Source: Podarcis muralis
Taxonomy: Eukaryota
Reading direction: 5' to 3'
NCBI RefSeq assembly: GCF_964188315.1
Contig: NC_135667.1
Location: forward strand, 9,734,001-9,798,000
DNA: 64,000 nt
Shown: positions 1,056 to 41,293 of the stretch, piece after piece
Position numbering within the stretch: position 1 is the first letter of the stretch
Layout of the letters: the number at the start of each line of letters is the position of its first letter
The notes under the pieces: model-generated
What the model was told of the DNA's origin: nothing
Databases searched by the model: none
The model's input: the letters and a program-made list of their open reading frames with translations, nothing else
Made by a program: the position numbers and the translations under genes

Positions 1056-1415
1056 TATTTGGAACAAACTTTTTGGGAAGGGTGGGAAGTGTTCTGCCAT
1101 TGCTTCCCTGTTCCAGGTGGTTAATGTGCTTTAAAATGTCCTCAAGCAGTCGGTGGCAATTTAAATTTTTAATTTCTTTTTTTCCTTTTTTCCTTTGTTG
1201 GGGGTGAGTGGGATGGATATTTGGTTGGGGATTAATTTTAGTATAATTGTTCAGTTCCTTTTTTGTTGTTGTTGTTGTTTTATTGGTTCTGTATAGTTTG
1301 TGTTTTGTTTTTAAGGGGCGGGATCAGGGCTGCCTGGGAGTGGGGCCCCAGCCAACACGATGGCTGGGACAGGTTCCACGGGGGGGAAGCACTGGGACAT
1401 CCGATCTCGGTGATC

Positions 1416-2378: not shown

Positions 2379-5300
2379 CCCCTTCATGGATCACTGCCTT
2401 GTCGTGGCGAAGGGGCTTGAATAACTCAGAGAAGCTATGAACTATGCCGAGCAGGGCACCCAAGATGAACAGGTCATAGTGGAGAGTTTTGACCAAATGT
2501 GATCCACCTGGAGGAGGAACCGGCAAGCCACTCCAGTATCCCTGCCAAGAAAACTCCATGGACAAAGACAACAGGCATATAAAAGTTATGATGCTGGAAG
2601 ATGAGCCCCTCAGGTCGGAAGGCACCCAACATGCTACTGGGGAAGAGCGGAGGACAAGTACAAGTAGATCCAGAGCTGATGAAGCGGCTGGGCCAAAGCC
2701 GAAAGGACGCTCAGTTGCAGATATGCATGGAAGTGAAAGGAAAGTCCAATGCTGTAAAGAAAAATATTGCATAGGAACCTGGAATGTAAGAACCATGAAT
2801 CTGGGTAAGTTGGATGTGGTCAAAAATGAGATGGCAAGAATAAATATTGACATCCTGGGAATCAGTGAACTGAAATGGACGGGAATGGGCGAATTCAGTT
2901 CGGATGACTATCATATCTACTACTGTGGGCAAGAAACCCATAAAAGAAATGGAGTGGCCCTCATAGTCAACAAAAGAGTGGCGAAAGCTGTACTGGGATG
3001 CAATCTCAAAAATGATAGAATGATCTGGATACGAATCCAAGGCAGACCTTTTAACATCACAGTAATCCAAGTTTATGCACCAACCACTGGTGCTGAAGAA
3101 ACTGAAATTGACCAATTCTATGAAGACTTACAAGACCTTATAGAAGTGACACCAAAGAAGGATGTTCTTCTCATTATAGGGGATGCTAAAGTAGGGAATC
3201 AAGAGATAAAAGGAACAACTGGCAAGTTTGGCCTTGGAGATCAAAACGAAGCAGGGCAAAGGCTAATAGAGTTCTGTCAAGAAAACAAGCTGGTCATCAC
3301 AAACACGCTTTTCCAACAACATAAGAGACGACTCTACACATGGACATCACCAGATGGGCAACATCGAAATCAAATTGATTATATTCTCTGCAGCCAAAGA
3401 TGGAGAAGCTCTATAAGGTCAGCAAAAACAAGACCTGGAGCTGACTGTGGCTCAGATCATCAGCTTCTTATAGCAAAATTCAAGCTTAAACTGAAGAAAG
3501 TAGGAAAAACCACTGGGCCGGTAAGATACAATCTAAACCAAATCCCTTATGAATACACAGTGGAAGTGAGGAACAGGTTTAAGGATTTAGATTTGCTGGA
3601 CAGAGTGCCTGAAGAACTATGGGTGGAGGCTCGCAACATTATACAGGAGGCAGCAACTAAAACCATCCCAATGAAAAAGAAATGCAAGAAAGCAAAGTGG
3701 CTGTCCAACGAGGCCTTACAAATAGCGGGGGAGAGAAGGCAAGCAAAATGCGAGGGAGATAGTGAAAGATACAGGAAATTGAATGCAGATTTCCAAAGAA
3801 TAGCAAGGAGAGACAAGAAGGCCTTCTTAAACGAGCAATGCAAAGAAATAGAGGAAAACAACAGAATGGGAAGAACCAGAGATCTGTTCAAGAAAATTGG
3901 AAATATGAAAGGAACATTTCGTAAAAAGATTACCATAATAAAGGACAAAAGTGGTAAGGACCTAACAGAAGCAGAAGACATCAAGAAGAGGTGGCAAGAA
4001 TACACACAGGAATTATACCAGAAAGATATGGATGTCTCATACACCCCAGGTAGTGTGATTGCTGACTTTGAGCCAGACATCCTGGAGAGTGCAGTCAAAT
4101 GGGCCTTAGAAAGCACTGCAGATAACAAGGCCAGTGGAAGTGATGGTATTCCAGCTGAACTATTTAAAATTTTAAAAGATGATGCTGTTAAGGTGCTACA
4201 CTCAATATGCCAGCAAGTTTGGAAAACTCAGCAGTGGCCAGAGGATTGGAGAAGATCAGTCTACATCCGAATCCCAAAGAAGGGCAGTGCCAAAGAATGC
4301 TCCAACTACCGCACAATTGCGCTCATTTCACACGCTAGCAAGGTTGTGCTTAAAATTCTACAAGGAAGGCTCAAGCAGTATGTGGACCGAGAACTCCCAG
4401 AAGTGCAAGCTGGATTTAGAAGAGGCAGAGGAACCAGAGACCAAATTGCAAACATGCGCTGGATTATGGAGAAAGCTAGAGAGTTCCAGAAAGACATCTA
4501 CTTCTGCTTCATTGACTATGCAAAAGCCTTTGACTGTGTCGACCACAGCAAACTATGGCAAGTTCTTAAAGAAATGGGAGTGCCTGATCACCTCATCGGT
4601 CTCCTGAGAAATCTCTATGTGGGACAAGAAGCTACAGTTAGAACTGGATATGGAACAACTGATTGGTTCAAATTGGGAAAGGAGTACGACAAGGCTGTAT
4701 AATGTCTCCCTGCTTATTTAACTTATATGCAGAATTCATCATGCGAAAGGCTGGGCTGGATGAATCCGAAGCCGGAATTAAGATTGCCAGAAGAAATATC
4801 AACAACCTCAGATATGCAGATGACACAACCTTGATGGCAGAAAGTGAGGAGGAATTAAAGAACCTTTTATTGAGGGTGAAAGAGGAGAGCGCAAAATATG
4901 GTCTGAAGCTCAACATCAAAAAAACGAAGATCATGGCCACTGGTCCCATCACCTCCTGGCAAATAGAAGGGGAAGAAATGGAGGCAGTAAGAGATTTTAC
5001 TTTCTTGGGCTCCATGATCACTGCAGATGGTGACAGCAGTCACGAAATTAAAAGATGCCTGCTTCTTGGGAGAAAAGCAATGACAAACCTAGACAGCATC
5101 TTAAAAAGTAGAGACAAAGGTCCGTATAGTTAAAGCTATGGTTTTCCCAGTAGTGATGTATGGAAGTGAGAGCTGGACTATAAAGAAGGCTGATCGCCGA
5201 AGAATTGATGCTTTTGAATTATGGTGCTGGAGGAGACTCTTGAGAGTCCCATGGACTGCAAGAAGATCAAACGTATCCATTCTTAAGGAAATCAGCCCTG

Positions 5301-5578
5301 AGTGCTCACTGGAAGGACAGATCGTGAAGCTGAGGCTCCAATACTTTGGCCACCTCATGAGAAGAGAAGACTCCCTGGAAAAGACCCTGATGTTGGGGAA
5401 GATGGAGGGCACAAGGAGAAGGGTACGACAGAGGATGAGATGGTTGGATGGTGTTCTTGAAGCTACCAGCATGAGTTTGATCAAACTGCGGGAGGCGGTG
5501 GGGGACAGAAGTGCCTGGAGTGCTCTGGTCCATGGGGTCACGAAGAGTCGGACACGACTAAACAACTAAACAACAACA
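2379..5578 (+). mobile_element. Near full-length BovB (RTE clade) LINE
   Basis: BovB-like 5' region and 3' end (gtccatggggtcacgaagagtcggacacgactaaac) with an (AAC)n tail. 12-bp TSD atcgactgtctg at 2367-2378 and 5579-5590. Confidence 0.97.
2489..5569 (+). pseudogene. BovB endonuclease-RT ORF with two frameshifts (pieces 2489-4702, 4663-5133, 5138-5569)
   Basis: Motifs IGTWNVRTM, GISELKW, NQIDYIL, GSDHQLL, NYRTIALISH, QAGFRRGRGT, CFIDYAKAFD, GVRQGC, LRYADD, FELWCWRR. Frameshifts near 4670 and 5115. Confidence 0.93.
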
Positions 5579-5590
5579 ATCGACTGTCTG

Positions 5591-7523
5591 GCTCCGAAGT
5601 GCCCTCTCCGATTGCATGGAGCCCGGACAGCCCCATGGTTTTCTTCGGAGCTGAGGGCGATGAAACAATCGCTGAGACGGCTAGAGCATCGGTGGCAAAA
5701 AACTCACTCCGAATCTGACCGGACACAGGATAGAGCTCAACGTCGAGCCTACCAAGTGGCGATAGCGACGGCGAAGAAGACTTTCTTCACCGCCTCTATT
5801 GCATCTGCAGAAAATAGTAGCAGGAGACTCTTTCAGGTGGTTCACAATTTAACGGAACCACCTTTACCACCGGGGCCTTGTAAAGACCCCAAGATCTCCT
5901 GCAACGATTTTGCAAAGTTTTTTGCAGATAAAATCACTCATATTCGGAAGGAGCTAGACACCACCGTGGGAACAGGGCTGGGGCGGGAGAGTGCTAGACC
6001 TCTGTCTGGTCAAGTTGCATGGAATCAATTTCAATCCGTTACCCCCCGAGGATGTGGACAGGCTGCTTGGACGCGTGAAACCAACCACCTGTCTCCTTGA
6101 TCCTTGCCCATCCTGGCTAATAAAAGCAAGCCGGGAAGGGCTGGGCGATGGTCTCTGCGGGGTGGTGAATGCTTCCCTCTGTGAGGGAACATTCCCAGAT
6201 CCGCTGAAAGAGGTGGTCATTAAACTGCTTCTTAAAAAACCATCTTTAGACCCGGCCAGTATGGCCAACTATCGCCCAGTCTCAAATCTTCCATTCTTGG
6301 GCAAGGTGATTGAGCGTGTGGTTGCTGAACAACTCCAGGCACGCCTGGAGGATGCGGATCATTTGGATCCCTTCCAATTGGGATTCAGGCCTCATCATGG
6401 GACTGAAACTGCCTTGGTCGCGCTGGTTGATGATGTCCGGCGAGCTAGGGACAAAGGTGAGAGTTGTTTCCTAGTTCTGCTGGATCTCTCAGCAGCCTTT
6501 CATACAATCGACCATAACATCCTTCTGGACCGTCTAGAGGGGCTGGGAGCTGGGGGCACTGTTATACAGTGGTTTCGCTCCTTCCTCCTGGGCCGTGTTC
6601 AGAAAGTGGTGGTGGTGGATGAGTGTTCAGACTCCTGGGCCCTCACTTGTGGGGTGCCTCAGGGTTCCGTCCTCTCCCACATGCTTTTTAACATCTATAT
6701 GAAGCCGCTGGGAGAGATCATCAGGGGGTTTGGACTGGGTGTCCATCAATATGCAGATGATACCCAGCTCTACCTCTCTTTTAAATCAGAACCAGTGAAG
6801 GCGGTGAAGGTCCTGTGTGAGTGCCTGGAGACGGTTGGAGGATGGATGGCGGCTAATGGATTGAGGTTGAATCCTGACAAGACAGAAGTACTGTTTTTGG
6901 GGGACAGGGGGCGGGCTGGTGTGGAGGACTCCCTGGTCCTGAATAGGGTAACTGTGCCCCTGAAGGACTAGGTGCGCAGCCTGGGAGTCATTTTGGACTC
7001 ACAGCTGTCCATGGAGGCGCAGGTCAATTCTGTATCCAGGGCATCTGTCTACCAACTCCACCTGGTACGCAGGCTGAGACCCTACCTGCCCGCAGACTGT
7101 CTCGCCAGAGTGGTGCATGCTCTGGTCTCCCGCTTGGACTACTGCAATGCGCTCGACGTGGGGCTACCTTTGAAGGTGACTCGGAAACTACAACTAATCC
7201 AGAATGCGGCAGCTAGACTGGTGACTGGGGGCAGCCGCCGAGACCACATAACACCGGTCTTGAAAGACCCACATTGGCTCCCAGTACGTTTCCAAGCACA
7301 ATTCAAAGTGCTGGTGTTGACCTTTAAAGCCCTAAACGGCCTCGGCCCAGTATACCTGAAGGAGCGTCTCCACCCCCATCGTTCTGAGGTCCAGCACCGA
7401 GGGTCTTCTGGCGGTTCCCTCATTGCGAGAAGCAAAGCTACAGGGAACCAGGCAGAGGGCCTTCTTGGTAGTGGCGCCTGCCCTGTGGAACGCCCTCCCA
7501 TCAGATGTCAAAGCGATAAATAA
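5591..7523 (+). pseudogene. L2 ORF2 reverse transcriptase region (frameshift at 6042-6047, TAG at 6969-6971)
   Basis: Motifs NYRPVSNLPFLGK, GFRPHHGTETAL, LDLSAAF, GVPQGSVL, YADDTQLY, LNPDKTE, SRLDYCN, QNAAARL, HWLPV. It resumes in frame with the 1416 ORF once BovB and one TSD copy are removed. Confidence 0.93.
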
Positions 7524-8686: not shown

Positions 8687-9649
8687 TCATTTCAAACTGC
8701 ATGCGTTTCTCTGCATTTTATTAAATACATGCTTGCAGGCAAAAGCATTTTTCAAAGCATCTTGGACCTGCCTGTTCCTCAGGCTGTATACAAAGGGGGT
8801 CATTAGAGGACAAACCACATTGTTAAGAATGGCCACAACTTTGTTGAAGTTTTGCCCACCATCTCGCTCAGGTATGATGTACATAGAGATGCAGCTTCCA
8901 TAGGCAACAGTGACAATGGTGACGTGGGAAGCACAGGTGGAAAAGGCCTTCTGCCTCCCTGAAGCACTTGGGATGTGGAGAACAGTTGAGATTATATTGA
9001 CATAGGACACAACAGTGATAGCGAAAGTCCCCAGTACTGTAAACACCGAAATAATAAAGTCGGAGAGCTCCAAGAAATGTGTGTCACCACAGAGAAGATG
9101 GAGTAATGGTTGGCTGTCGCAGAAGAAATGGTCAATGATGTTTGAACCACAAAAAGGAAATTGAATGAATAGCAAAGTTTGAGCCAAAATCACAGCAAGC
9201 GACCCAATCCAAGAGAACAGCACCAAAAGTGTGCAGAACTTCTCGTTCATGATGGTGGTGTACCTTAGGGGGTTGCAGATGGCCATATATCGGTCAAAGG
9301 ACATCACAGTCAGCAGGAAGAAATCTGTGGTGCCCAGGAAGAAATAGAAAAAGAATTGACTTATACATCCAGCATACGAGATTGTTTTCCTGCCAGATGC
9401 AAGGTTGAACAACGCCTTTGGGATGGCAGCAGTGGTGTATCCAATCTCCAAGATGGCATAATTCCGTAGGAAGAAATACATGGGTGTCCTGAGGCGGAAA
9501 TCCAGGAGAGTGATGGTGATAATCATCATGTTTCCCGTTACAGCCATCAGGTACATGATTAAGAAAAGGACAAAGAAAAATATCTCTAGTTTGGCGTTCT
9601 CAGTGAATCCCAGCAGTAAAAACTCATTGATCTTTGTTTGGTTCTCCAT
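8687..9649 (-). CDS. Olfactory receptor, family-6-like, 320 aa (MENQTKINEF...)
   Basis: Motifs LRTPMYFFL, MSFDRYMAICNPLRY, DHFFCD, KAFSTCASH, PFVYSLRN and sequon NQT. The ATG follows a ttttgccagcag acceptor. Confidence 0.95.
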   Translation of the reverse strand: MENQTKINEFLLLGFTENAKLEIFFFVLFLIMYLMAVTGNMMIITITLLDFRLRTPMYFFLRNYAILEIGYTTAAIPKALFNLASGRKTISYAGCISQFFFYFFLGTTDFFLLTVMSFDRYMAICNPLRYTTIMNEKFCTLLVLFSWIGSLAVILAQTLLFIQFPFCGSNIIDHFFCDSQPLLHLLCGDTHFLELSDFIISVFTVLGTFAITVVSYVNIISTVLHIPSASGRQKAFSTCASHVTIVTVAYGSCISMYIIPERDGGQNFNKVVAILNNVVCPLMTPFVYSLRNRQVQDALKNAFACKHVFNKMQRNACSLK

Positions 9650-9809
9650 AAAGTCTTGACTTTCATGAGTTATCTGCTGGCAAAAGATGAGCATAGATAA
9701 GAATCATCATCCTCCTCATCATCATTATGAAGTTAAGCCAAGCCTGCCTGGATCAGACCAGGGAAGCATATAGTTCAGCCTCCTGTTTCATACATTGACT
9801 CAGAATCGG

Positions 9810-12260: not shown

Positions 12261-13059
12261 TAAGGAAAGCGTCAACATTTTTCACATTACATTGTTGTTA
12301 AATGTGTGTTGTTGAAGGCTTTCAAAAATTCTTAATAACAGTAATAACACATCAACGGGGGGGGGGGTTGTTTTTCAAAAATTTCAGTTCATGAAATTTT
12401 GGAATGCTGTTCTCCAGCCAAGTAGTGGGTGAAGATGTGCATATACTAGGATAAAAAGTCCATAAAAATGCACACATTGGTTACAATAACATGTCAAAGT
12501 TCATTATATTATGATAAATCGCTTTAAAAAAACATGTAGATTAGGAAAAAATGTGCACATTAGGAGAATTTTTTTCATGAAGACTTGCTGATTTGCCAAA
12601 ATTTTGTAGTAGTTAACTTTAATCATATAGCTTGGCACTGATACTACCCTAGATATTTCTCTCTCTCTCTCAAAAAAGGAATAATTGACATGTTTGCCCA
12701 TAATGAAAATAAGAAAACTCTGAATACCTTTATAAAGCAAAGCAGTATAATATGCTATAATATGCCTCACCTTGGTATGATGCAGCTTTCAGCACCAGAT
12801 CTATAATAAAGAGTTCCTGTGTCACTTAAACCTTATCATGGCTGGGTGTCTTCCATCATCCTCTCCATAGAATACTAGTGTGATAAGCTTTATTTAAAGG
12901 TCTCTTGGGAGGAGGACGTTCATTCTTAAGTGGAACAAAGCTGTTTTAATTTGCACAGATTAGCCTTCTCCAAGCCATGCTCTCCACATGTTTGGACCAC
13001 AGCTCCCAGCAGCCACTGCCAGATTCAGAGGGTCCCAAATTCAATCTCCAGGTTAGGAG

Positions 13060-18927: not shown

Positions 18928-19287
18928 GCCTTCTTTAGAACTGGAGATGGGGTGGGAGAAGAAAGTGATGGACAGAAATACATAACATTGAAATAAATAA
19001 ATAATGTTGTGAACCACCCTGTGATCTTTGGATGAATGGCGTGATAAATATAAGCAAAGACATAGATGAATAAATGTTCACAGTCATTTTAGTCACTACA
19101 GAGCTGTCGACAATTGCATGTGCAACCCCCGAGTTAAAATATGCCAATCGAAATTACTTAATGGTGTTGATGTTGAGGATTGAGTTCAATCAAGATAACC
19201 ATTATCTCTACTGCTGGGCTATGGCCCCTACAAAACATGAGGAAAACACACAAAGTAGGAAAATTGATGCCGACCTTTACTATATTT

Positions 19288-19336
19288 AGACAGACAGACG
19301 GACGGACGGACGGACAAACAGACAGACAGACAGACA

Positions 19337-19370
<34 letters not shown>
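19288..19370. repeat. Compound microsatellite (GACR)n(CA)n
   Basis: Direct reading of the sequence. Confidence 0.95.
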
Positions 19371-19374
<4 letters not shown>

Positions 19375-20970
19375 GCTAGAAGAGTAAAGCATAAGAAAGG
19401 AAGAGGAGAAATGGAGAAATCTAAGCCTGTGTGTGCTTTTTATCTTGGTGGATAGGTATAAAATTCTAAGCTACTGAAAATCTTTTCTCCGCATCCTCGC
19501 AGTAACTCTAAAGTGTGCCACCTTTGGAAAAGAACCAGCATGGTGCAGTGTTTAGTGTGTTGGACTAGGGCCTGGGACGCTTGAGTTCAAATCCTGACAC
19601 AGTCATGATCCTTGGCCTAATCAACTTCTCAGGTTTGTTGTGATGAAGAATGGGAACGAGAGAACCATGTGCCCCATTTTAAGCTCTTTGCAGGAACTAT
19701 GAAGTCAGACTGTCAGGTTCCAAATGGCATTCCCACTATCATGGAAAACTGCAGAAACATTACAATGTGCATTGCATATCCAGGTAATCCAGGTAATCAG
19801 ATAGGGGGTCCATTTTAAATTAAGATGGCTGGTGGACCTAAGGTCTTCCAGAGGTTGATGGACTCCAGCTCCCAGCAGTCAAGGCCAGCATGGCCAATGG
19901 TCAAGGAGTGTGGGAGCTGAAGTCCAAAAGGATCTGCAGAGCCACAGCCTCCCCATTCCTGACAAAGGATCTGAGCCGCCTCTTCTTCCTAAAGCTTACC
20001 TTGGAAATTATTTCATGCCTTCAATATTGTGGCTGTGCCAACTGCATTGTAACGGACCATGGACAACATTTGTGAATGATTAGCCCCCTAATATCTCCTT
20101 TCTTTTTTATATTTGAAAGCTGTATAGAAATATGGACGTACGGAGATCTAGTTTTGTCAGATTTGTGGCTCATTATAGGTTCCCACAACATTATAGGTTC
20201 CCAGAAGATCTATGTATTCTGAGTAACAGATGACTAATTTAATCCTCTCTTGTTTTGATTCTACGGACTCAGTACTTGAAATGGGGGAGTGAAAAGAAGA
20301 GGCCATGTTGCGTCTAGGGCCGGGCATGGTGAGCTTAAACCCAGGAGGGCAAGGTTCATATCCCCAGAGAACTCAGAAACTTTCCTTGGGCAAGGTACTC
20401 TCTCTCAGCTTAACATCCTTCACTGTTGTGAAGATAAAATGGGGGCAGGACCCATTCATGGAATGGTGAGATAAGAATGTAAGAATTAAATAGCAATGCT
20501 ATAAAATTCATAACTGAGATCTAAGTGATATACTTTTAATAAAAAAATCAGGGTCAACATTGTTAATATTTTTAAAATATTAAAATGCTTGCATCATAAT
20601 GTGGTGGTGATGATGATTCAGCTCACAACTATGGAGGGAATGGAAGGTTTTTAACCATTTCCCTCCCAGCTATTTACCCAAATCTCTCTCCAGCCCCTTT
20701 CTTTGACTCAGATGGGAGCTTTCTTCTAAATGCCAATAGAGGCTGGCGGGTAGGGGAGAGGATTTTCATAGAATCATAGAATCATGGAATGGACCCTGAG
20801 TCATTGTGACCAAAGCCAGAAGGGAAAGGTTAGCACCCCACACCCCTGTATCCTACAGTCTCCAACCTGATGTCTCCCTGACCTGTGGCTACTATTTCTT
20901 TTTTAAATGATTCCTGTAAACCTAGAGAGATACATTTAACTTCACATTTTGGATGACCTGTGTTGGTTTC

Positions 20971-21298
20971 TGAAATATACTCAGAGTCCTGTAGTGATTC
21001 CATGCTCTTTATTGCAGCTTGTAAAACAGTGATTGAATTGCCCCCCAAACCTCAGGCTTTTATATACATTATTTACACAATGAGTCCCATCTGATTGGCT
21101 GATTCTGCTTCCCTCCTGGAGCCTAGTTGGTCTTTTTCTGCAGACCAATCAGTTGTTGCATTCTAGGATCCTATCAGCCTAATAGGCTGGTTAACTTCCA
21201 CCTGGAGCCTGATTGGTCTTTTCCTGCAAGCCAATCAGTTGTTGCATTCTAGGATCCTATTTGCCTATTGTTCTAGGATCCAAGCTTAGTACATAACA
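20971..21298 (-). mobile_element. Solo LTR
   Basis: Reverse strand TGTTATGTACT...AGTATATTTCA, 5-bp TSD gtttc at 20966-20970 and 21299-21303, several CCAAT boxes, TATA and AATAAA. Same family as 45711-45996. Confidence 0.9.
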
Positions 21299-21579
21299 GT
21301 TTCTAAATAGCCCTTGAGAGACACCTATTGTCTGTAGCTAAGGTCTGAAAGTGAGTGTTGTGGGGGTGGACATAAATGAAAGCAGAGGAGGATGCTTTTG
21401 TGGCAGTTGAAGAGTGGAGATGTCAATGCGTTGGTGATGCCCTTTTTGCAAGATAGGTCATTCCATTACCCCTTCCATCACATTTCCACCATCATCACCC
21501 TCGACAGTGAGTTAGTAGCATTCCATGGCTACGGAGCATGCTCACTGTACTTTTGGCTCTCTGGGCAATGAAAGTGAGA

Positions 21580-21745
21580 TGAGAAGGACTTTACCTGAGA
21601 CTTGGGTTCCCCTGACATTAGGTATGCAGCTGGGAGCTTTTAGGACTCGGTAATAACCATTCCCAGGTAACTTCATATAAACTCTGTCTCAATGACAGCA
21701 CATTCTGTAGAAAGAATGAAGACACGACACTAAGTCATGGTAAGA
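21580..21745 (+). promoter_or_regulatory. Putative promoter and first exon of the OR at 22792, ending ATG|gtaaga
   Basis: O/E-like ttcccctg, catataaa at about 21674, ATG at 21737-21739, canonical donor at 21740. Paralogous to 26140-26303. Confidence 0.6.
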
Positions 21746-22325
21746 TTTGGGGGCCAATGAACCAACACTTTATTTCTTTATTATCTTGATTTGGCTGCTA
21801 GCTACATAAGAAAATTCAGAGGATGTAATAAATTTTGTCTGTGACTTTCTAATTCTTTGGAGTCTTACAGTGCTGGAGTAGAAGAAGATACAGTTTTTTG
21901 CCAATTTTCCCTTCCATCGGCACCACTTTCCATACTGCTCTGACCCCACCCCAGCAACACCTTCTGAGTAAGATTTTAGGGTGCATATGGGTCTGCAATG
22001 TGGAAAGGGTATATGCCCCCTTCTCCAATCTACTGACTCAATGCTCTCCTGAAAAGAAGAGGGTTCAGTGGGAGCCACTGGATAAAACCAAATAATGTTG
22101 GCTGTTTATTTAGATTATTCACTATACACATACATTGGGTTTTAAGAATAATGGGGATTCTTTAAAGAGGTATGTGAATTAAGTTAATAGAAGAACAATT
22201 GGTTCATCTTCCTCCTCACATCAGACAGTTCTAAACTGAATCATTCAAACATGCCTATTATACTACTGTTACACTCATTTGTTTCATGTTCATGCATGGG
22301 GTGGTGATTTTTTCCAGTACAGATA

Positions 22326-22484
22326 CAGTATTTTTCCATGTATAAGATGACCCCTGTTTTTGGGGACTCCAAACTGAGAAAACACCCCACAGTTCTACCC
22401 ATGTATAAGACGAGCCCCAATTTTAAACTTTTTTTTTTTTTTTGGTAAAAAAAAAAACCTAGTCTTATACACAGAAAAATACAG
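22326..22484 (+). mobile_element. Tc1/mariner-type MITE, second family
   Basis: TIRs cagtatttttccatgtataaga...tcttatacacagaaaaatacag, TA flanks. Confidence 0.8.
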
Positions 22485-22791
22485 TAATCGAATTTCTATC
22501 ACCCACTTGTTAGGCATTGATCTGAGAAAAAGCCAACCTAGGACAATCTTATGAAACCTCTCATTGTTAGGAAGAGAGGAATAATAAGAATAAGAATAAT
22601 GTTCTGAATTTATGAAAAGGGAAGTATCGCAAAATTAAGAAATAACTGGAATACAAGAGAAGACTTTTTAGGGTGGAGATAATGGTTATTTGTATATTTG
22701 AAATCTCAGAAGAGGGGGAAAGTGGCAACCTTGAATCACACAAACTCCAACGTGTGTAATTTGCATGTGTCTTCACTTGCCAATTTTGCAG

Positions 22792-23745
22792 CTGAAACTG
22801 TGGTTGAGGAATCAGAGCAGCGTGGACCAGGTGTCTGAGTTCATCTTAATTGGCTTCCATCTTCCTAGGCCATTGGAGGTATTTTTTTCTATGGTGTTGC
22901 TTCTTGTTTTCCTGTTAACGCTAGCTGGGAATTTCACCATCATCACACTGGTATGTCTGGACCAGCGCCTCCAAACCCCCATGTACTTTTTCCTTTGCAA
23001 CCTCTCCCTCCTGGAGGTCCTCTTTGTCTTGTCAATCACCCCCAAGATGCTGGTGAACCTCCTTTCCATGAACAAAGCCATCTCTTTCTTGGGCTGTGTG
23101 TCTCAGTGCTATTTCTACTTCTTTCTTGGAACCACGGAAACCATCCTTATTGCTGTGATGGCCTTTGATCGCTACGCTGCCATCTGCAAACCTCTTCGCT
23201 ATACCATCATCATGAATGGTTGGGTCTGCATCAATTTGGTCTTGGGTTGCTGGATTGGTGGTTTCCTCTCTACACTTGGCCCCATCATTTTGCTCTTCAA
23301 CCTATCCTTCTGTGGCTCTAACACTATAGACCATTTCTTCTGTGACTATGCCCCAATGATAAAGCTTTCTTGCAATGATGTACATTTCCAATTGGCTCTG
23401 GAGAATGTCTTGTCCTCAGTGGTGCTCCTGAGCTCTTTGTTTGTCACTGTCGTCTCTTACATCTATGTCATTGTCACCATCTTGCGCATGCACTCTGCCA
23501 AAGGTCGACAAAAGACATTTTCCACCTGTGCTGCTCATATCACTGTTGCCTCCATCTTTTTTGGCAGTGCAATTTTCATGTACTCTTTACCTAGCCAAGG
23601 ATTTTCTCGGCAGGTACAGAAGGTAGTTGCAGTTTTTACTGCCATTGTAACACCATTACTAAACCCTTTTATTTATAGTCTAAGGAATGAGAAGGTCAAG
23701 GAGGCCTTCAAAGACTGTCTGAGGAAGTGGGCATTCTCACAATGA
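22792..23745 (+). CDS. Olfactory receptor main coding exon; start ATG probably on the upstream exon (21737-21739)
   Basis: Motifs LQTPMYFFLCNLS, MAFDRYAAICKPLRY, DHFFCD, KTFSTCAAH, PLLNPFIYSLRN. Phase-0 acceptor ttttgcag at 22791. No ATG before TM1. Confidence 0.9.
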   Translation: MKLWLRNQSSVDQVSEFILIGFHLPRPLEVFFSMVLLLVFLLTLAGNFTIITLVCLDQRLQTPMYFFLCNLSLLEVLFVLSITPKMLVNLLSMNKAISFLGCVSQCYFYFFLGTTETILIAVMAFDRYAAICKPLRYTIIMNGWVCINLVLGCWIGGFLSTLGPIILLFNLSFCGSNTIDHFFCDYAPMIKLSCNDVHFQLALENVLSSVVLLSSLFVTVVSYIYVIVTILRMHSAKGRQKTFSTCAAHITVASIFFGSAIFMYSLPSQGFSRQVQKVVAVFTAIVTPLLNPFIYSLRNEKVKEAFKDCLRKWAFSQ

Positions 23746-23930
23746 GTGGAAATCATTTGAGACTGTTCTCCTATCTTTTCAGAGGGAAGTCAAAATGGCA
23801 TCACCATTTATCAATCCCTAAATAAAATGGTGAAAGGAGGAGGCCCTTCCAGACCTTTTACAGTACAGAACTAGTTGCTTTTAGGCACTGTTTGTAGCAA
23901 ATGTTCGTCCTGAAACACTGGAAATGATCA

Positions 23931-24108
23931 CCGTGTTTTTCTGTGTATAAGACTAGGTTGGTTGTTGTTTTTTTACCAAAAAATTAGGTTTAAAATTGGG
24001 GCTCGTCTTATACACACGTATTGCTGAGGGGTGCTTTCTTAATTTGGAGTCCCCCCAAATAGGGGGGCGTCTTATACATGGGGGCGTCTTATACACAGAA
24101 AAATACAG
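23931..24108 (-). mobile_element. Tc1/mariner-type MITE, inverted partner of 22326-22484
   Basis: Internal motifs (ggggctcgtcttatac, tttggagtcccc) are the reverse complements of those in 22326-22484; same TIRs. Confidence 0.8.
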
Positions 24109-24201
24109 TAACTGTTGGGATCCATGACGGCCATTGTCTGCATTAATAAAGCCATGGCAATTGTCATTAATCTTGGATTGTTTTGTAGATAGAACAGGAT
24201 A

Positions 24202-24550
24202 AAAGTAAAGGGACCCCTGACCATTAGGTCCAGTTGTGACCGACTCTGGGGTTGCGGTGCTCATCTCGCTTTATTGGCCAAGGGAGCCGGCGTACAGCTT
24301 CTGGGTCATGTAGCCAGCATGACTAAGCTGCTTCTGGCGAACCAGAGCAGCGCACGGAACGCCGTTTACCTTCCTGCCGGAGCGGTACCTATTTATCTAC
24401 TTACACTTTGACTTGCTTTCGAACTGCTAGGTTGGCAGGAGCAGGGACCAAGCAACTGGAGCTCACCCCGTCACAGGGATTCGAACCGCTGACCTTCTGA
24501 TCGGCAAGTCCTAGGCTCTGTGATTTAACCCACATTGCCACCCGCGTCCC
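24202..24550 (-). mobile_element. Sauria SINE, full length
   Basis: gggacgcgggtggc head, Sauria body and tttac tail. 13-bp TSD atagaacaggata at 24189-24201 and 24551-24563. Confidence 0.93.
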
Positions 24551-25733: not shown

Positions 25734-26139
25734 ATATCACTGTGTCCTACACTCCAAAATTTGATGTTCTCCACCTCTTCTGTGGCTGCTGTTTCTGTTT
25801 AAAACAATTCCTGTAAGACTAAAGGTGTGTGTGCATTTTACTTCACATGTACTGTAGTCTCACCACTGATTATTAGAAACTGGCTTTTGAGAGACACCTA
25901 CTGTCTGTAGCTAAAGTCTGATGGTGTGGGTCATCAGATGATGGTGGACATAAGTATATGCAGGGTGCAAATAGTCCCATGAAGTGTGGAAATGTCATGC
26001 CCTTTCTCAAGATGCACCATTCCACTGCCGCCGCCATGCAAACTGGTTTTCCTTCAACACTCACAACAGTTGGCAGCATTCTGTGGCCACTGAGGATGTG
26101 CATTGTATTTTTGGTCATCTGGGTAATGACAGTGAGATC

Positions 26140-26303
26140 AGAAGGTCTTGGTATGAGACTTGGGTTCCCCTGGCATTAGGTATGAAGCTGAACCTTCTAG
26201 GCACTCAGTAATGATCATCCCCAAGTGCCTTCATATAAGCTTCATCTTACTGATAATTCATACTGTGTAAAGGAGAAAGACACTATACCAAGCCATGGCA
26301 AGA
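26140..26303 (+). promoter_or_regulatory. Putative promoter and first exon of the OR at 28440, ending ATG|gcaaga (GC donor)
   Basis: Paralogue of 21580-21745. catataag at about 26232, ATG at 26295-26297. Confidence 0.5.
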
Positions 26304-27475
26304 ACCAAAAGAACCAATTGCATTTCATTACCTTGATATGGCCAATAAATGTTAACACTGACTGCAGGAAGAGAAGGCAGAGGCTGTAATGAATTGCGTT
26401 CATCAACCTACAGAAGGCTTTTTGAATCACTGGAGTATCTACACCTGACAAATATTTCAGGGATCCACATGTGGATGACAAGTGGAATTGAAAATATCTG
26501 TCCCTTTGTCCAGTCTGCTGTTTGAATGCTCTTCCAGATAAAATGGGGTTCTGTGAGTATAAACAAAGGAGATTGGTACAACCCAGCATGTTGTATGTTC
26601 AATTTGTTGTAGAGTATTCAATACACATGGACATTTGATATGAAGACTAATAGGGATTCTTTAAAGGGGGATATTCAATTAAAATTAAAAGAAGAACAAT
26701 CCCTCCACATACACATCAGGCGGTTCTAAATTTAATCATTCATGTATACCTCTTATATTCCTGTTACACATAGTGTGATGGTTCAATGCAATTAAACAAT
26801 GTCTCCACCACCAGGGGTGCCAACTTGAAGAAAATATTGAGGGGGGTGGTAGGTCAGCCCCACCCCACATAACTGATCACATGACATGGTCACACACACC
26901 ATTTGAATGGCAATGTCCATCAACTTGGGGGGGGGTGCCCCCTCAATTATTTTATTGGGTGGGGCTCCTATGTCTGTGTCATGGGCCAGGAGTCAGCTTC
27001 ACCTGCTGAGCAGCAGCCTGAAGGAGCAGAAGGTGAAGTGACTCCACCTGCTGCTGATCAGCCTTCTTGCTCCTAAAGAGAACCAGCTGGCTCCAGCTTT
27101 CTTAAGTAGGGTTTCCAGCCTCAATCACGTGCTGGACACAACTTTTGTCATTCCTGAACAGACCTTGCTGCTTCTTGCAGCCTTGGACCCCCGGCTTTCT
27201 TGACCTCCTGGATCGTCTGGCTACATGAACTGAGATACTCCTGACCTTAGGACTTGATTGGACCTTGTATATGGACTCTGCCTCCAGGCACATACCCCTT
27301 TGAGACTTGGCTGGTTGGCTGACTTCTCCCTCCATTGAGCTCTGGCATGGCTGGCAGCACAGGACTACAACAGTCCACCACTGATTTCTTAGGCAGTCTT
27401 CAGAGAAAGAGCTGAACTGGGACAATCTGCCTGGAATCTTTCAGTGCAAAAAGAGTGGGACCAACAAAAAACGTT

Positions 27476-28264: not shown

Positions 28265-28439
28265 TTGAAAAAATAATAATCACTGGCTTGCAGAAGATGA
28301 CTTTATATGAATGTTTAAGGTGAAGATGAGAGGTGTTTGTATCCTTTTAACCTCAGGAAAGAGGGGAGGTGGCCTGCCTTGAATGCTACAAACTCTACCA
28401 TTTTTAATTTGTCTGTGTGCCCACTTGACCATTTTGTAG

Positions 28440-29393
28440 CTCAATCTGGAGCCAAGAAATCATAGCAAACCAGAGCAGGTGACAGAGTTCATCTTGATTG
28501 GCTTCCAACTTCCTAGGTGCTTGGAGCTCTTCATTTTTGTGGTGCTTCTTCTCAGTTTCCTGCTAACGTTAGCTGGGAATATCTCCATCATCACACTGGT
28601 ATGTCTGGACCAGCGTATCCAAACCCCCATGTACTTTTTCCTCTGTAACCTCTCACTCATGGAGGTCTTCTTTGTCATATCTATCATCCCCAAGATGCTG
28701 GTGAACATGGTTTCTCTGAACAAAGCCATCTCTTTCTTGGGCTCTGTGGCCCAGTGCTATTTCTACTTCTCCTTTGCTACCAGTGAAACCATCCTTATTG
28801 CCGTGATGGCCTTTGATCGCTATGTTGCCATCTGCAGACCATTTCGCTATGCCATCATCATGAATGGATGGGTCTGCACCTATTTGGTCCTGGGTTGCTG
28901 GATGGGTGGCTTCCTTTCTATCCTTGCCCCAATCATTTTGCTCTCTTACCTTTCCTACTGTGGCTCTAATATTATAGACCATTTCTTCTGTGACTATGCC
29001 CCAATGATAAAACTTTCCTGCAATGACGTGTATGCTCTCCTGGCTGTGGAGACTGCCCTGTCCTCAGTGGTGCTCCTTGGCTCTTTAACGGTCACTGTTG
29101 TCTCTTATGTCTACATCATCGCAACCATCTTATGCATGCATTCCACCAAAGGTCGGCAAAAGACATTTTCCACCTGTGCATCTCACATCACTGTTGCCTC
29201 CATCTTTTATGGCAGTTCAATCTTTATGTACTCTTTGCCCAATCAGGGACGTTCTCAGGCTGTCCAGATGGCACTTGCTGTCCTTACCTCAGTGGTGACA
29301 CCATTACTAAACCCATTTATTTATACTCTAAGGAATCAGAAGGTCAAAGAGGCCTTAAAAGACTGTTTAAGGAGGTGGAATGAGTGGAAATAA
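28440..29393 (+). CDS. Olfactory receptor main coding exon; start ATG probably on the upstream exon (26295-26297)
   Basis: Motifs IQTPMYFFLCNLS, MAFDRYVAIC, DHFFCD, KTFSTCASH, PLLNPFIYTLRN. Phase-0 acceptor ttttgtag at 28439 gives LNLEPRNHSKPEQVTEF. No ATG before TM1. Confidence 0.88.
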   Translation, partial: LNLEPRNHSKPEQVTEFILIGFQLPRCLELFIFVVLLLSFLLTLAGNISIITLVCLDQRIQTPMYFFLCNLSLMEVFFVISIIPKMLVNMVSLNKAISFLGSVAQCYFYFSFATSETILIAVMAFDRYVAICRPFRYAIIMNGWVCTYLVLGCWMGGFLSILAPIILLSYLSYCGSNIIDHFFCDYAPMIKLSCNDVYALLAVETALSSVVLLGSLTVTVVSYVYIIATILCMHSTKGRQKTFSTCASHITVASIFYGSSIFMYSLPNQGRSQAVQMALAVLTSVVTPLLNPFIYTLRNQKVKEALKDCLRRWNEWK

Positions 29394-30410: not shown

Positions 30411-30541
30411 NNNNNNNNNNNNNNNNNNNNNNNNNNNNNNNNNNNNNNNNNNNNNNNNNNNNNNNNNNNNNNNNNNNNNNNNNNNNNNNNNNNNNNNNNN
30501 NNNNNNNNNNNNNNNNNNNNNNNNNNNNNNNNNNNNNNNNN
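30411..30541. other. Assembly gap (131 N)
   Basis: N run at the position homologous to the microsatellite tail at 10857-10968. Confidence 1.
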
Positions 30542-34720: not shown

Positions 34721-35199
34721 AAGGTAGTGCCATTTTTCGCCAACATTTCTCTGTTGAAAATAGGGACATCCCATTCCAGAAAGATAATTTTACTATTTAT
34801 ACCCCACACATCTTACTGGGTTGCCCCAGCCACTCTAGGCAGCTTCCAACATATATAAAAATATAATAAAACATTAAACATTTTTTTTCAAAAAAACCTA
34901 CCTATACCAGATTGCTTTAAGATGGCCTAGGGGTCGGCTAACTCCCTACCCTCCAACATTTCTCTAACGAAAATAGGGACATCCTAAGGAAAAGTGGGAC
35001 ATTCCGGGATCAAATCAGGAACCAGGATGGCTTCTCCAAATCAGGGATGTCCCTGGAAAATAGGGACACTTGGAGGGTCTGTGATGTTTGGACGGTTTGA
35101 ACTGAGCAGGACCTATTGGGAATTGTAATCCAAACATAACAAGAGCACAGATTGTAGAAGGCTAATTCAAGCATTGTGACCATCCTCCAAAGGCATGTT

Positions 35200-35261
35200 T
35201 AAATAAAGCTTGCTCAACTGGTATTATGTCAACAGAATGAAGACAATCAGCTGTGGTAAGA
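35200..35261 (+). promoter_or_regulatory. Putative first exon of the OR at 36569, ending GTG|gtaaga
   Basis: Homologous to 40430-40502 (ttaaataaa...ctggtatt...|gtaagatt), with ATG changed to GTG at 35253-35255. Confidence 0.5.
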
Positions 35262-36568
35262 TTATAGGATTTAGAAATCTACATGAAACATAATTTCACC
35301 ATGGCTATGCCAGGCATATTACAGAATATTATACTGATTTGCTTTCTTTATAAATGTATTTATAGATTTTTTTATTATGGGCTGAACATGACTATCTTTT
35401 GTGTGACAGACATCTAGTGCAGTATAAATGCATTATTTTGTGTTTTGTGCATTCTGTTTTCTTCCTACCTTTGTCCGAAAATAGATATACTATACTTCTA
35501 CATAATTAAATCATTAAATAGGCAATAAAGTTAGAATAAAACCCAAAATAATAATCTACAAAGTAGTTGGAAATGGAACCACAAATCTATTACTGTTAAT
35601 ATTATGTATCTATCTATCAAAGTCTTTATTTGATTATACATATGAGGCTGGGTGTATTTCTTCAGGAAGGGATATACCATGAAATCGTATAAAGTCTTCT
35701 TAGAAGTTTGTCTCCTAGAGTTCAACAAGGTTTAATCCTAGGAAAATGGGAATAGGATTGCAGCCTTAATGCTCTATGTACAAATGCTGAATTTTTGTAT
35801 TTGGTTGGATATAAGGATGAGTGGTTGTGTGAATTTTGGTTTCTCTCTGTTCCTCACTTTTCACATTCTGAAGTTTGGTTTTCCACATTTTCAAATCGGA
35901 TTGTTGTTGTTGTTGTTGTTTAAGTCATCCTGAAAAATTGTCAGTATCTCATTGCAAATTTCTCCTATTCCCCCCCCCCCCATCCCTAGTTGGAAGATTG
36001 AGGATGCTGTGGTTTGTTTGTTTGTTTAAAAAGAGAAGAAGGTATAAATGAGAAATAAGGCTCTTTGTGATCAACAACTTTATCTTGTAAATGATATTAT
36101 AAAGAAGCAATAGAAATAAAACAAACACATAATTAGAGGTAAGGTAAAGCAGCTATCTTTCTTTTAATAAGGTCCAGTGAAGTTCTGACCGTCTTGAACA
36201 ACACATGTTTACATGCAATGTACAGTGAAGAATGCTGGTCATTTTCCAAGTGCAGAGTACTGCAAAATCAATGACAATTTTACAGAATCATGATCTGGAG
36301 GAAAACCTACTTTGAGCTTTCTGTTCTAAACTTCTACTGCTGGCAAGAAAACAAAACATTCTGTATTTTTTTATGAGCAACAGAACAAAAGTAACAAAGA
36401 ATTAGTTGTGGTGTCAACAGAAAACATCTTGATAATTCTTGTCAGCGAGGAAGCTCCTGTTAGTGCCCAGAACAGTAGAAGAGCGGAAAAAGAGTCTGCC
36501 TTGAATCACACAAACTCTAAAGCATACATGTTTCAACTGCTTGATTGTTCTATACTTCCACATTGGCC

Positions 36569-39669: not shown

Positions 39670-40419
39670 TATTCTTGGTATGGGTTGAAGAGAGAGTGGC
39701 AGAGAGGGAGTTTAAAGGGTGTTTAAAAGGTGTTCCCCACCTTATGTGATTTCACTTAAGCATGAGGGGGCCCGGAATGTAACCCCAAGATAAGTGGGGA
39801 GTCACCTGCATAAAAACACAACAATGCATAACATAATTACAAATGAAACCCTCCCCCAAACCACATACACAGTTTCAAAGGCCATAGATTATTTAATTAG
39901 CCAAAGGTACACAGAGGATGAATGGTTTTTTCCTGGCACCTAAATATATGAAAGGAAAGCACCAGGCGAGCCTCCCTGGGGAGAGCATTCCACAAACAGT
40001 AAGAACAAAAGTGCTTACTGTTGCTAAAGGTGAGCCCCACTTTAAATGAACTGTTGGGAAATAACTCCTCCCTCTGGAAAATAATTGATGAAATAGTATT
40101 ATAAGATGTTTCTCCTTTTGAATGCAACCTGTCAATATCATGCCAGCACACATGTTTCAGAGTAGGAGAATATAGTAGCTGAATCATAGATTGTCTGCTT
40201 TGCCCGAATAAGGTCCCAGGTTTGACCTCCACCATGTCCAGGCAGAGAAATTGCTGGAGAAATTGCCAACCCAACCCAAATATAGGATTGAACATGGGAC
40301 TGTTTGAAGCTGGCAGGGGCTGCTGGGAATTGTAATCCAAACACAATGATAGAACAAGGATGAAGAAGACTGATTCATGCAGCAGAAACCTGGTCTGTTC
40401 CATCTCAGTATAATTGTCA

Positions 40420-40502
40420 TCTTCCCAAGGTACCTTTAAATAAATTGTGCCTTGCTGGTATTCTATAGAGAGGATTAGGAAAGGCACCCAGCCATGGTAA
40501 GA
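40420..40502 (+). promoter_or_regulatory. Putative promoter and first exon of the OR at 41294, ending ATG|gtaaga
   Basis: taattg and ttcccaagg upstream, tttaaataaa, ATG at 40494-40496, donor at 40497. Confidence 0.5.
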
Positions 40503-41293
40503 TTCATGGACTTGGAAAACTTACATCATTTCTGTTTGAGACTTTCAGCTGATAACTGCACCATACTTAGGCAACACTCTACAAATTTACCCTACACAGG
40601 AACACTTATCTATTATTTAACTTATGGATCAACATGGGCAAATTTGCTTTTTGTGTAATGTTTACTTTTCTCTTTGTTTCCTTTTTTGTTGGTTTTAATG
40701 TCTCTGTTCTTTTGTTTATATATTGTAAGTCTCTTAAAATTACTTTAGTAAAACAGTGACCAGTAAATTTAATGAAGCAAATAACAGACACACTATTATC
40801 TATGCTATACTACACAATCCAATCATTACATAGCAAAAAGTTGGCATTTTAATTGTTTCAGCGCTTGATCTGAAAATGCATATGAGCCTCTCCTCTCCAG
40901 GAAGGTATTTAAAGGGCAAATTTTTGATGTCTAGGAGCCAATAAAACTGCTTGGAGGTTTTAATGCAACCAAGCAGTACATAAATGTTGCAAAATAAATT
41001 GGGGTTTTTTAAGTACAGTAAGAAGTCAGTCCCACAGAATTCAATGGAAATTTGAACACTAATAATGTATGAGGAAATGTTGATTTCATTATTATTATTA
41101 TTTGTATTCCTTAAGAAGATTGGGATGCTCTGGTTTTAAGTGTAAGCCTTTTGGCAACTGTAAGGGAGGGGGATCCTGTTAGTGCCCAGATTACTGGAAG
41201 AGATGAAGAACAGTTTTCCTTAAATCATACAAACCCTAAAGTGTATATGTGTGTGTTTCATCTGCTTGATCATCCCACAATTCCACTTTGGCC

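What the first reader, a model, noticed from the sequence alone, without database searches (positions are those of the whole stretch)
21737..22830. OR gene whose start codon sits alone at the end of an upstream exon
Seen: the OR exon at 22792 is fully open and keeps its N-terminal sequon (NQS). Both ATGs that its paralogues use (MGLRNQSSM) are absent: it reads ctg tgg ttg agg aat cag agc agc GTG. A pyrimidine-rich acceptor (ttttgcag, 22791) lies in phase 0. About 1 kb upstream, a TATA-like catataaa is followed by ...aagtcATG|gtaaga (21737-21745). Splicing gives M-LKLWLRNQSSVDQVSEF, a complete receptor. Known: OR coding regions are normally single-exon, and split-coding ORs have been described only for a minority of mouse/human genes. 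Inference: this is a functional split-CDS OR that ORF-based pipelines would call truncated or a pseudogene.
Basis: partly seen in the sequence, partly recalled or inferred. Interest (0 to 1): 0.78.

Follow-up and report, generated by a model that had tools for sequence, protein, structure and literature searches.

The report
Lizard smell receptor with split start
A working wall-lizard smell-receptor gene most likely takes its start codon from the last three letters of a tiny upstream exon, a layout shared with a worm lizard; this kind of gene is already known from mouse and human, and here it is supported by comparison between species only, not by RNA.

Summary

It gives an intact 326-aa single-exon ORF, which the public annotation uses. 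The claim that pipelines would call this gene truncated is therefore wrong.

The split-start reading is nevertheless the better-supported one:
- The gene is under purifying selection (dN/dS 0.18-0.32).
- Exon 1's ATG|GT is conserved in four lacertids and in the amphisbaenian Rhineura, which has the same acceptor, the same loss of the canonical ATG, and no in-exon ATG upstream of the sequon.
- A gecko and two snakes keep the same acceptor, but their exon 1 does not end in ATG and they retain an in-exon ATG.
- The acceptor follows a 67-nt AG-free, pyrimidine-rich run.

Against it: Podarcis raffonei has AG->AA at the acceptor, and four RNA runs gave no reads on the gene, which says nothing either way.

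This is a new member of a known kind (split-CDS ORs, Barnes 2020). The scan has noted similar split-start ORs at other loci of this genome.

The parts
21434..21673 (+). Promoter-like conserved block upstream of exon 1 (TAAT and TCCC-AGG motifs just before the TATA-like box)
   Evidence: Homologous at 73% to 25994-26303 upstream of the 28-kb paralogue. Profile hits upstream of four other ORs in the window and in Rhineura, gecko and snake loci. The motif reading rests only on resemblance to OR promoters (PMC3247239).
21674..21681 (+). TATA-like box catataaa, 56 nt before the ATG
   Evidence: Read. An aligned TATA-like element is present in all copies across squamates. The transcription start is not mapped.
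21737..21739 (+). Proposed start codon: the last three bases of exon 1 (G at -3)
   Evidence: Invariant in 4 lacertid orthologues, Rhineura and par28. Replaced by TTG/ACG/GTG/TAG in gecko and snakes, which keep an in-exon ATG.
21740..22791 (+). Proposed intron, 1052 nt, GT...AG; holds a SINE-like repeat with a T/A run at about 22320-22480
   Evidence: Donor gtaaga 21740-21745 and acceptor AG 22790-22791. P. raffonei carries an extra ~190-bp insertion here, so the stretch tolerates indels.
22765..22767 (+). In-frame ATG 27 nt upstream of the acceptor; start of the public 326-aa model (T at -3, T at +4)
   Evidence: Conserved in 4 of 4 lacertids. Absent in Rhineura and par28.
22770..22791 (+). 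Pyrimidine tract and acceptor ...tcttcacttgccaattttgcag
   Evidence: 15 of 20 pyrimidines and a 67-nt AG-free run. A homologous YAG is present in Rhineura, par28, gecko and snakes, always in phase 0. It reads AA in P. raffonei.
22792..23745 (+). Exon 2 coding part: 317 codons plus stop TGA at 23743-23745; OR6M1-like receptor
   Evidence: dN/dS is 0.18-0.32 among four lacertids.
22810..22818 (+). N-terminal glycosylation sequon N-Q-S
   Evidence: An NxS sequon is kept in frame in all orthologues, Rhineura and par28.
22822..22824 (+). GTG at the place of the paralogues' second ATG
   Evidence: It is ATG in Zootoca and P. muralis, GTG in L. agilis and GTA in P. raffonei.

Best explanation
The locus is a functional class-II (OR6M1-like) olfactory receptor gene with two exons. 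A TATA-containing promoter drives a very short first exon whose last three bases are ATG (21737-21739). A 1052-nt GT-AG intron is removed. The ATG then joins in phase 0 to CTG at 22792 and gives M-LKLWLRNQSS..., a 318-residue receptor that keeps its N-terminal glycosylation site.

The acceptor is the ancestral 5'-intron acceptor of this OR clade in squamates. In the common ancestor of lacertids and amphisbaenians, the end of exon 1 became ATG and the canonical in-exon ATG was lost, so initiation moved to exon 1. The ATG at 22765 used by the public 326-aa model lies in the last 27 nt of the intron. It would be used only in transcripts that do not splice at 22791.

Shown here: the sequence features, their conservation, and selection on the coding body. 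Inferred: use of the junction and of the exon-1 ATG in vivo.
For: - Purifying selection on the target, with omega 0.18-0.32 among four lacertids, means it needs a start codon. Downstream of 22792 the first in-frame ATG falls inside TM1.
- Exon 1's CATG|GTAAG is invariant in the window species, P. raffonei, L. agilis, Zootoca and Rhineura. The leader before it varies and carries a 1-bp indel.
- Rhineura has tattttgcag|CTG AAC CTG GGG CCG AGA AAT CAG AGC. That is the same acceptor, the same lost ATG, the sequon in frame, and no ATG in the open frame upstream of the acceptor.
- The Rhineura and target branches both have omega well below 1 (0.13-0.19 and 0.25-0.34) across dS 0.56.
- Gecko and two snakes have the same phase-0 pyrimidine-rich YAG 12 nt before their in-exon ATG, and their exon 1 ends TTG/ACG/GTG/TAG rather than ATG.
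- The AG-free run before the acceptor is 36-76 nt in all ten sequences, against a background median of 8 nt.
- The exon-1 ATG has G at -3. ATG 22765 has T at -3 and T at +4.
- Paralogue par28 has the same layout, and the TAG of its acceptor is an in-frame stop.
- Split-start ORs are established in mammals (PMC7055050).
Against: - There is no RNA evidence. Three bulk and one single-cell RNA run of the species gave zero reads on either exon. Tissue is unknown, so the result is uninformative.
- P. raffonei reads ttttgcaA at the acceptor while the ORF, exon-1 ATG and donor are intact. The change is synonymous in the ATG-22765 frame.
- The in-exon ATG 22765 and the open frame behind it are conserved in all four lacertids, and public models use it.
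- Exon 1's ATG is also kept upstream of par41, which has its own in-exon ATG, so its retention alone does not prove start-codon use.
- par28, the paralogue that could only work by the split start, is deleted in L. agilis, fragmentary in Zootoca, and carries a Cys->Ser change at a conserved Cys in the window.
Confidence: 0.6

Rival explanations
1. Single-exon coding region, as in the public annotation. Translation starts at ATG 22765 and gives the 326-aa protein MCLHLPILQLKLWLRNQSS.... Exon 1 is a non-coding leader spliced to an acceptor upstream of 22765, or the mRNA starts close to the coding exon. The AG at 22791 is not used in this lineage.
For: - The ATG and open frame are conserved in 4 of 4 lacertids.
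- 326 aa is a normal OR length, and it is the existing NCBI-type model for this genome, P. raffonei and L. agilis.
- P. raffonei has lost the AG by a change that is synonymous in this frame.
- Of 3 substitutions in the 9 extra codons, 2 are synonymous.
Against: - This ATG is absent in Rhineura and par28, so it cannot be the start that kept the lineage functional after the canonical ATG was lost.
- Its initiation context is poor (T at -3, T at +4).
- It lies inside a 67-nt AG-free, pyrimidine-rich run that ends in a deeply conserved acceptor.
- If exon 1 is spliced to the nearest upstream AG (ctcag, 22709), I worked out by hand from the sequence (the script check I planned was not run) that its ATG would be out of frame and open a uORF of roughly 45 codons running across 22765.
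- It puts 23 residues before the SEF motif, against 12-14 in most relatives.
- With about 19 open codons, an in-frame ATG by chance is not rare.
Confidence: 0.2
2. Both starts are used, as in the second class of Barnes et al.: a split isoform (M-LKLW...) and a single-exon isoform (MCLHLPILQ-LKLW...). They would arise from alternative splicing or alternative transcription starts and differ only in 8 N-terminal residues.
For: - Both sets of signals are intact and conserved in the window species, L. agilis and Zootoca.
- Barnes et al. describe mouse and human ORs with exactly such isoform pairs (PMC7055050).
- It would explain how P. raffonei could tolerate loss of the AG.
Against: There are no transcript data. 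No separate promoter or acceptor for the unspliced form was identified.
Confidence: 0.15
3. The receptor lacks a proper start in this species and is an intact-looking, recently disabled gene, or it initiates at a non-AUG codon.
For: The canonical ATGs are gone. The sister-layout gene par28 is decaying in other lacertids.
Against: dN/dS is 0.18-0.32 over the whole lacertid radiation, and the 317 codons are open in four species. Two usable AUGs exist.
Confidence: 0.05

Closest known systems
Split-CDS olfactory receptor genes of mouse and human (Barnes et al. 2020, BMC Genomics 21:196; PMC7055050)
   Same: - The initiation codon is supplied by the exon upstream of the main coding exon.
- The intron lies in the extracellular N-terminal region.
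- The intron is of kilobase scale (1052 nt here; 550 nt to 22.6 kb in mouse).
- The Met and the splice junction are conserved in orthologues.
- In mammals some such loci were previously called pseudogenes or had alternative single-exon isoforms.
   Different: - This is a squamate gene, not a mammalian one.
- Exon 1 contributes only the ATG.
- There is no RNA-seq support here, which Barnes et al. required.
- An in-frame ATG lies upstream of the acceptor inside the intron, rather than downstream of it, so automatic annotation yields an intact single-exon model with a probably wrong N-terminus.
Ordinary vertebrate OR gene with non-coding 5' exon(s) and a single coding exon
   Same: A short TATA/O-E/homeodomain-type promoter exon, one 5' intron, and an acceptor a few bases upstream of the receptor's N-terminus. 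This is the state seen here in gecko and snakes.
   Different: In the target, par28 and Rhineura the in-exon ATG just after the acceptor is gone and exon 1 ends in ATG in phase 0.
Multi-exon OR genes of cichlid fish (Azzouzi et al. 2014, cited in PMC10869828)
   Same: OR coding sequence interrupted by an intron outside mammals.
   Different: I did not read that paper. The families are different and independently derived. I made no comparison of intron positions.

Membership tests
Vertebrate olfactory receptor (class A GPCR, Pfam 7tm_4) | Significant match to the OR profile over seven transmembrane segments | tested here: met
   PF13853 7tm_4 E=4.1e-44 over residues 47-319; PF00001 E=2.8e-36. 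The nearest named relatives are 'olfactory receptor 6M1-like'.
Vertebrate olfactory receptor (class A GPCR, Pfam 7tm_4) | Intact ORF with OR hallmark motifs (PMYFFL, MAFDRY, KTFSTC, NPFIYSLRN) and an N-terminal NxS/T sequon | tested here: met
   All are read in the translation. The sequon NQS is at 22810-22818.
Vertebrate olfactory receptor (class A GPCR, Pfam 7tm_4) | Purifying selection (functional gene rather than pseudogene) | tested here: met
   NG86 dN/dS is 0.18-0.32 between four lacertid orthologues. The target branch is 0.25-0.34.
Split-CDS OR gene (criteria of Barnes et al. 2020) | Full-length ORF obtained when the ATG of the upstream exon is joined in frame to the main exon | tested here: met
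   ATG 21737-21739 followed by GT. AG at 22790-22791 is followed by an open frame in phase 0 to 23745. This was read from the sequence. The joined protein was not sent to any tool.
Split-CDS OR gene (criteria of Barnes et al. 2020) | Initiating methionine conserved in orthologues | tested here: met
   The exon-1 ATG is present in P. raffonei, L. agilis, Zootoca and Rhineura.
Split-CDS OR gene (criteria of Barnes et al. 2020) | Splice junction conserved in orthologues or closest paralogues | tested here: inconclusive
   The GT donor is kept in 5 of 5. The acceptor AG is kept in the window species, L. agilis, Zootoca, Rhineura and par28, but reads AA in P. raffonei.
Split-CDS OR gene (criteria of Barnes et al. 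2020) | [quoted passage not shown] | tested here: met
   In the window species, P. raffonei and L. agilis codon 20 is GTG/GTA, and the next Met lies in TM1. Zootoca, P. muralis and Rhineura do have ATG at that codon (a 300-307 aa product without the sequon).
Split-CDS OR gene (criteria of Barnes et al. 2020) | RNA-seq reads across the junction in olfactory tissue | not testable with these tools
   The only RNA runs offered for the species gave no reads on the gene. Tissue is not stated.

The most novel reading that the evidence does not exclude
An OR lineage moved its start codon into the 5' exon in the common ancestor of lacertids and amphisbaenians and has kept that split start under purifying selection ever since. 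The in-exon ATG that public annotation uses in lacertids would be an intronic decoy. On the coding tree, the neighbouring paralogues with a normal in-exon ATG (36.5, 41.3 and 48.6 kb) may even be reversions that regained an in-exon start and lost the acceptor, leaving a relic ATG at the end of exon 1. This would be a dated, stepwise example in a reptile of how split-CDS ORs arise and revert.
Probability: 0.5. Interest if true: 0.5.

Novelty: new member of a known kind. Interest (0 to 1): 0.4.

Why it matters
If the split start is real, the public protein models for this receptor are wrong at the N-terminus in at least six squamates. Three carry nine spurious residues, and three or more are cut back to a second Met and so lose the glycosylation site. 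That matters for receptor expression studies and for counts of intact versus pseudogenised ORs.

It also extends conserved split-CDS ORs from mammals and fish to reptiles. The intermediate states are visible in living species: a phase-0 acceptor next to the start, then an ATG arising at the end of exon 1, then loss of the in-exon ATG.

It does not change the general picture of OR genes, because the phenomenon is already described.

Tried and rejected
- RNA evidence: one run search found no RNA holder. Reads of three bulk and one single-cell RNA run laid on 19100-23900 gave zero coverage of either exon, with only partial matches to a dispersed repeat at 20.9-21.35 kb. I treat this as uninformative, not negative.
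- par28 as a clean control for an obligate split start: rejected as decisive. Its coding exon is deleted in L. agilis and fragmentary in Zootoca. Its recent omega of 0.30 rests on 15 changes (P=0.04), four of which hit invariant residues.
- Inferring exon boundaries from NCBI's choice of the second Met in Zootoca: rejected. NCBI also picks the second Met in Candoia and Protobothrops although an upstream in-exon ATG exists.
- P. muralis DNA: not on record.
- Branch-point motif search: my regular-expression scan was not reliable, and no claim is made.
- O/E-site reading of the promoter block: only two-mismatch matches by eye, kept as a weak inference.
- MAFFT versus by-eye placement of the 6-nt indel at the exon-2 start: not resolved, and immaterial to the conclusion.
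- Coding-sequence tree: it does not make target, par28 and Rhineura a clade. Either the in-exon ATG was regained in par36/41/48, or gene conversion has homogenised the coding bodies. I could not separate the two.

Full report
**Observation**

- catataaa at 21674-21681
- aagtcATG|gtaaga, with the ATG at 21737-21739
- ttttgcag ending at 22791
- the frame ctg aaa ctg tgg ttg agg aat cag agc agc GTG from 22792, open to the stop at 23743-23745

The product is a clear olfactory receptor (Pfam 7tm_4 E=4e-44). It sits in a cluster of ten OR ORFs and is named OR6M1-like in relatives. The three neighbouring paralogues at 36.5, 41.3 and 48.6 kb start MGLKNQSSM, MGMRNHSSM and MGLRNQSSM. Both of those ATGs are missing in the target.

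It gives a 326-aa ORF, MCLHLPILQ-LKLWLRNQSS.... That ORF already exists as a called protein on this 59.6-Mb chromosome. NCBI also models the orthologues of P. raffonei and Lacerta agilis this way. P. muralis and Zootoca are modelled from a second Met at 307 aa. The claim that pipelines would call the gene truncated or dead is therefore wrong. The real question is which of two available AUGs is used.

**The gene is functional**

Pairwise dN/dS between the window species, P. raffonei, L. agilis and Zootoca is 0.18-0.32 over 314 codons. In the window species, P. raffonei and L. agilis, codon 20 is GTG or GTA and the next Met lies in TM1. The start must therefore lie upstream of the sequon.

**Exon 1 is a real, old unit**

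The 310 bp ending exactly at gtaaga are homologous to a block 2.2 kb upstream of the paralogue at 28.4 kb ("par28", 73% identity). A profile of the block also finds copies upstream of the 41.3-kb and 36.5-kb genes, and on the minus strand at 12.8 kb.

Each copy has a TATA-like box about 55-60 nt before a GTAAG-type donor, preceded by TAAT and TCCC-AGG-like motifs. O/E sites, homeodomain sites and TATA boxes are the elements enriched at OR transcription starts (PMC3247239). This promoter reading rests on resemblance only.

**Conservation of the junction**

- CATG|GTAAG at the end of exon 1 is invariant in all four lacertid orthologues. The leader before it varies and has a 1-bp indel.
- The acceptor AG is kept in the window species, L. 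agilis and Zootoca. P. raffonei reads ttttgcaA, a change that is synonymous (Gln) in the ATG-22765 frame.
- ATG 22765 is kept in all four lacertids.

Within lacertids, then, the evidence is ambiguous, and one species counts against an obligatory split.

**Deeper comparison**

The amphisbaenian Rhineura floridana has a gene 81% identical in protein, annotated from MEQVTEF at 300 aa (P0012). Its DNA reads tattttgcag|CTG AAC CTG GGG CCG AGA AAT CAG AGC AGT ATG. That is the same acceptor, the same absence of the canonical ATG, and the sequon kept in frame. The 35 open codons upstream of the acceptor contain no ATG. About 1.3 kb upstream lies the exon-1 block (E=3e-43), ending CCAAATGATG|GTAAGG.

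The Rhineura and target branches have omega 0.13-0.19 and 0.25-0.34 across dS 0.56. Both genes have therefore stayed functional for a long time with this layout.

A gecko (Eublepharis) and two snakes (Candoia, Protobothrops) carry the same pyrimidine-rich YAG in phase 0, 12 nt before an in-exon ATG. Their exon-1 blocks end TTG, ACG, GTG or TAG before GTAAG.

The pattern is consistent. Every gene that lacks the in-exon ATG after the acceptor has ATG at the end of exon 1. The outgroups that keep the in-exon ATG do not.

The acceptor looks like a true 3' splice site. In all ten sequences it follows a 36-76 nt AG-free run and 14-15 of 20 pyrimidines. The window background has a median AG-free run of 8 nt, with 2% of runs at 60 nt or more. 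The target's run is 67 nt.

The exon-1 ATG has G at -3. ATG 22765 has T at -3 and T at +4.

**Most likely mechanism**

Transcription starts shortly after the TATA-like box. The short exon 1 ends in AUG. The 1052-nt intron is removed, and the AUG joins CUG at 22792 in phase 0. Translation gives M-LKLWLRNQSS..., 318 residues. There are 15 residues before the SEF motif, close to the 12-14 of relatives, against 23 for the 326-aa model. On this reading ATG 22765 lies in the pyrimidine tract of the intron.

The features, their conservation and the selection are shown. Use of the junction is inferred. I put this at about 0.6, the purely single-exon reading at 0.2, use of both at 0.15, and no proper start at 0.05.

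**Caveats**

- No RNA evidence. The run search found no RNA holder, and four RNA runs of the species gave no reads on the gene. Tissue is unknown.
- The P. raffonei AG->AA is unexplained. It could be a recent loss, a polymorphism, an assembly error or a switch to the other ATG.
- Exon 1's ATG is also retained upstream of the 41.3-kb gene, which has its own ATG. It is GTG upstream of the 36.5-kb gene.
- par28 has the same layout with a GC donor, and the TAG of its acceptor is an in-frame stop. It is intact only in Podarcis, and the window's copy has lost a conserved Cys.
- The protein tree places the lacertid paralogues as target,(par28,(par41,(par36,par48))), with Rhineura outside. Either the last three regained an in-exon ATG and lost the acceptor, or gene conversion has blurred the coding history.
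- MAFFT and my own reading differ on where a 6-nt indel lies at the start of exon 2. This does not affect the conclusion.

**Comparison with what is known**

Barnes et al. 2020 (PMC7055050) describe 13 human and 41 mouse ORs with the start codon in an upstream exon. These include loci with both a split and a single-exon isoform. They required RNA-seq support plus conservation of the Met and the junction. The present gene meets the comparative criteria apart from the P. raffonei acceptor, and the RNA criterion could not be tested.

None of the 125 related public proteins retrieved starts with the M-L(K/N)L... model. The only split model among them (P. raffonei par28, P0005) uses the same acceptor but a different, probably ab initio, upstream exon.

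Earlier notes of this scan report other split-start ORs elsewhere in this genome. I used them as leads only.

Exon 2 was searched by reference.

**Verdict**

This is a real and correctly located observation, with one important omission. The split-start interpretation is the best supported but lacks transcript proof. It is a new member of a known kind, of moderate interest.

Noticed in passing
window 26118-26303 and 28432-29393: Paralogue par28 has the same two-exon layout, with a GC donor (GCCATG|GCAAGA) and acceptor ttttgtag whose TAG is an in-frame stop. The 317 codons are open. The window's copy has Ser for the conserved TM3 Cys and PFRY for PLRY. Its coding exon is deleted in L. agilis and fragmentary in Zootoca. 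This is the separate finding s1-152836.
   Followed up: partly
L001:10001-10033 (P. raffonei); homologue at window 26483-26642: NCBI's P. raffonei model of par28 (328 aa, MGFCEYKQRRL|LNLEP...) uses the same acceptor but a different upstream exon with a weak donor (TTG|GTACAA). That exon lies 180-340 nt downstream of the conserved ATG-ending exon. It looks like an ab initio fill-in.
   Followed up: partly
window 12805-12916, minus strand: A further copy of the promoter/exon-1 block lies upstream of the OR at 8687-9694 (-). It ends CCATG|ATAAGG, so the donor GT is replaced by AT.
   Followed up: no
window 35170-35283 and 40332-40504: These are the exon-1 blocks of the 36.5-kb and 41.3-kb paralogues. 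The first ends CTGTG|GTAAGA (no ATG). The second ends CCATG|GTAAGA (an upstream ATG in a good context, although the gene has its own in-exon ATG). No pyrimidine-rich phase-0 AG precedes their coding exons.
   Followed up: partly
L005:9944-10003, L007:4959-5003, L008:4959-5003, L006:5971-6003: Public models of Zootoca, Candoia, Protobothrops and Rhineura start at the second Met (MEQV...). This cuts off the stretch where relatives carry their N-terminal glycosylation sequon, although in-frame upstream ATGs or the split start are available.
   Followed up: partly
window 20871-21353: This is the only stretch of 19100-23900 with RNA reads. All are partial matches, with many mismatches and loose ends, which is the behaviour of a dispersed transcribed repeat rather than of this locus.
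   Followed up: no
window 22320-22480 and about 23950-24260 (-); L001:5290-5480: A SINE-like element with a long T/A run lies in the proposed intron, and a similar copy lies just downstream of the gene. P. raffonei has an extra ~190-bp GC-rich insertion at the same intronic site.
   Followed up: no
window 1263-6971: Three long + strand ORFs (385, 737 and 326 aa) read like endonuclease and reverse-transcriptase parts of non-LTR retrotransposons. I ran no family scan on them.
   Followed up: no
window 30411-30541: A run of 131 N (gap or masked). I left it alone.
   Followed up: no
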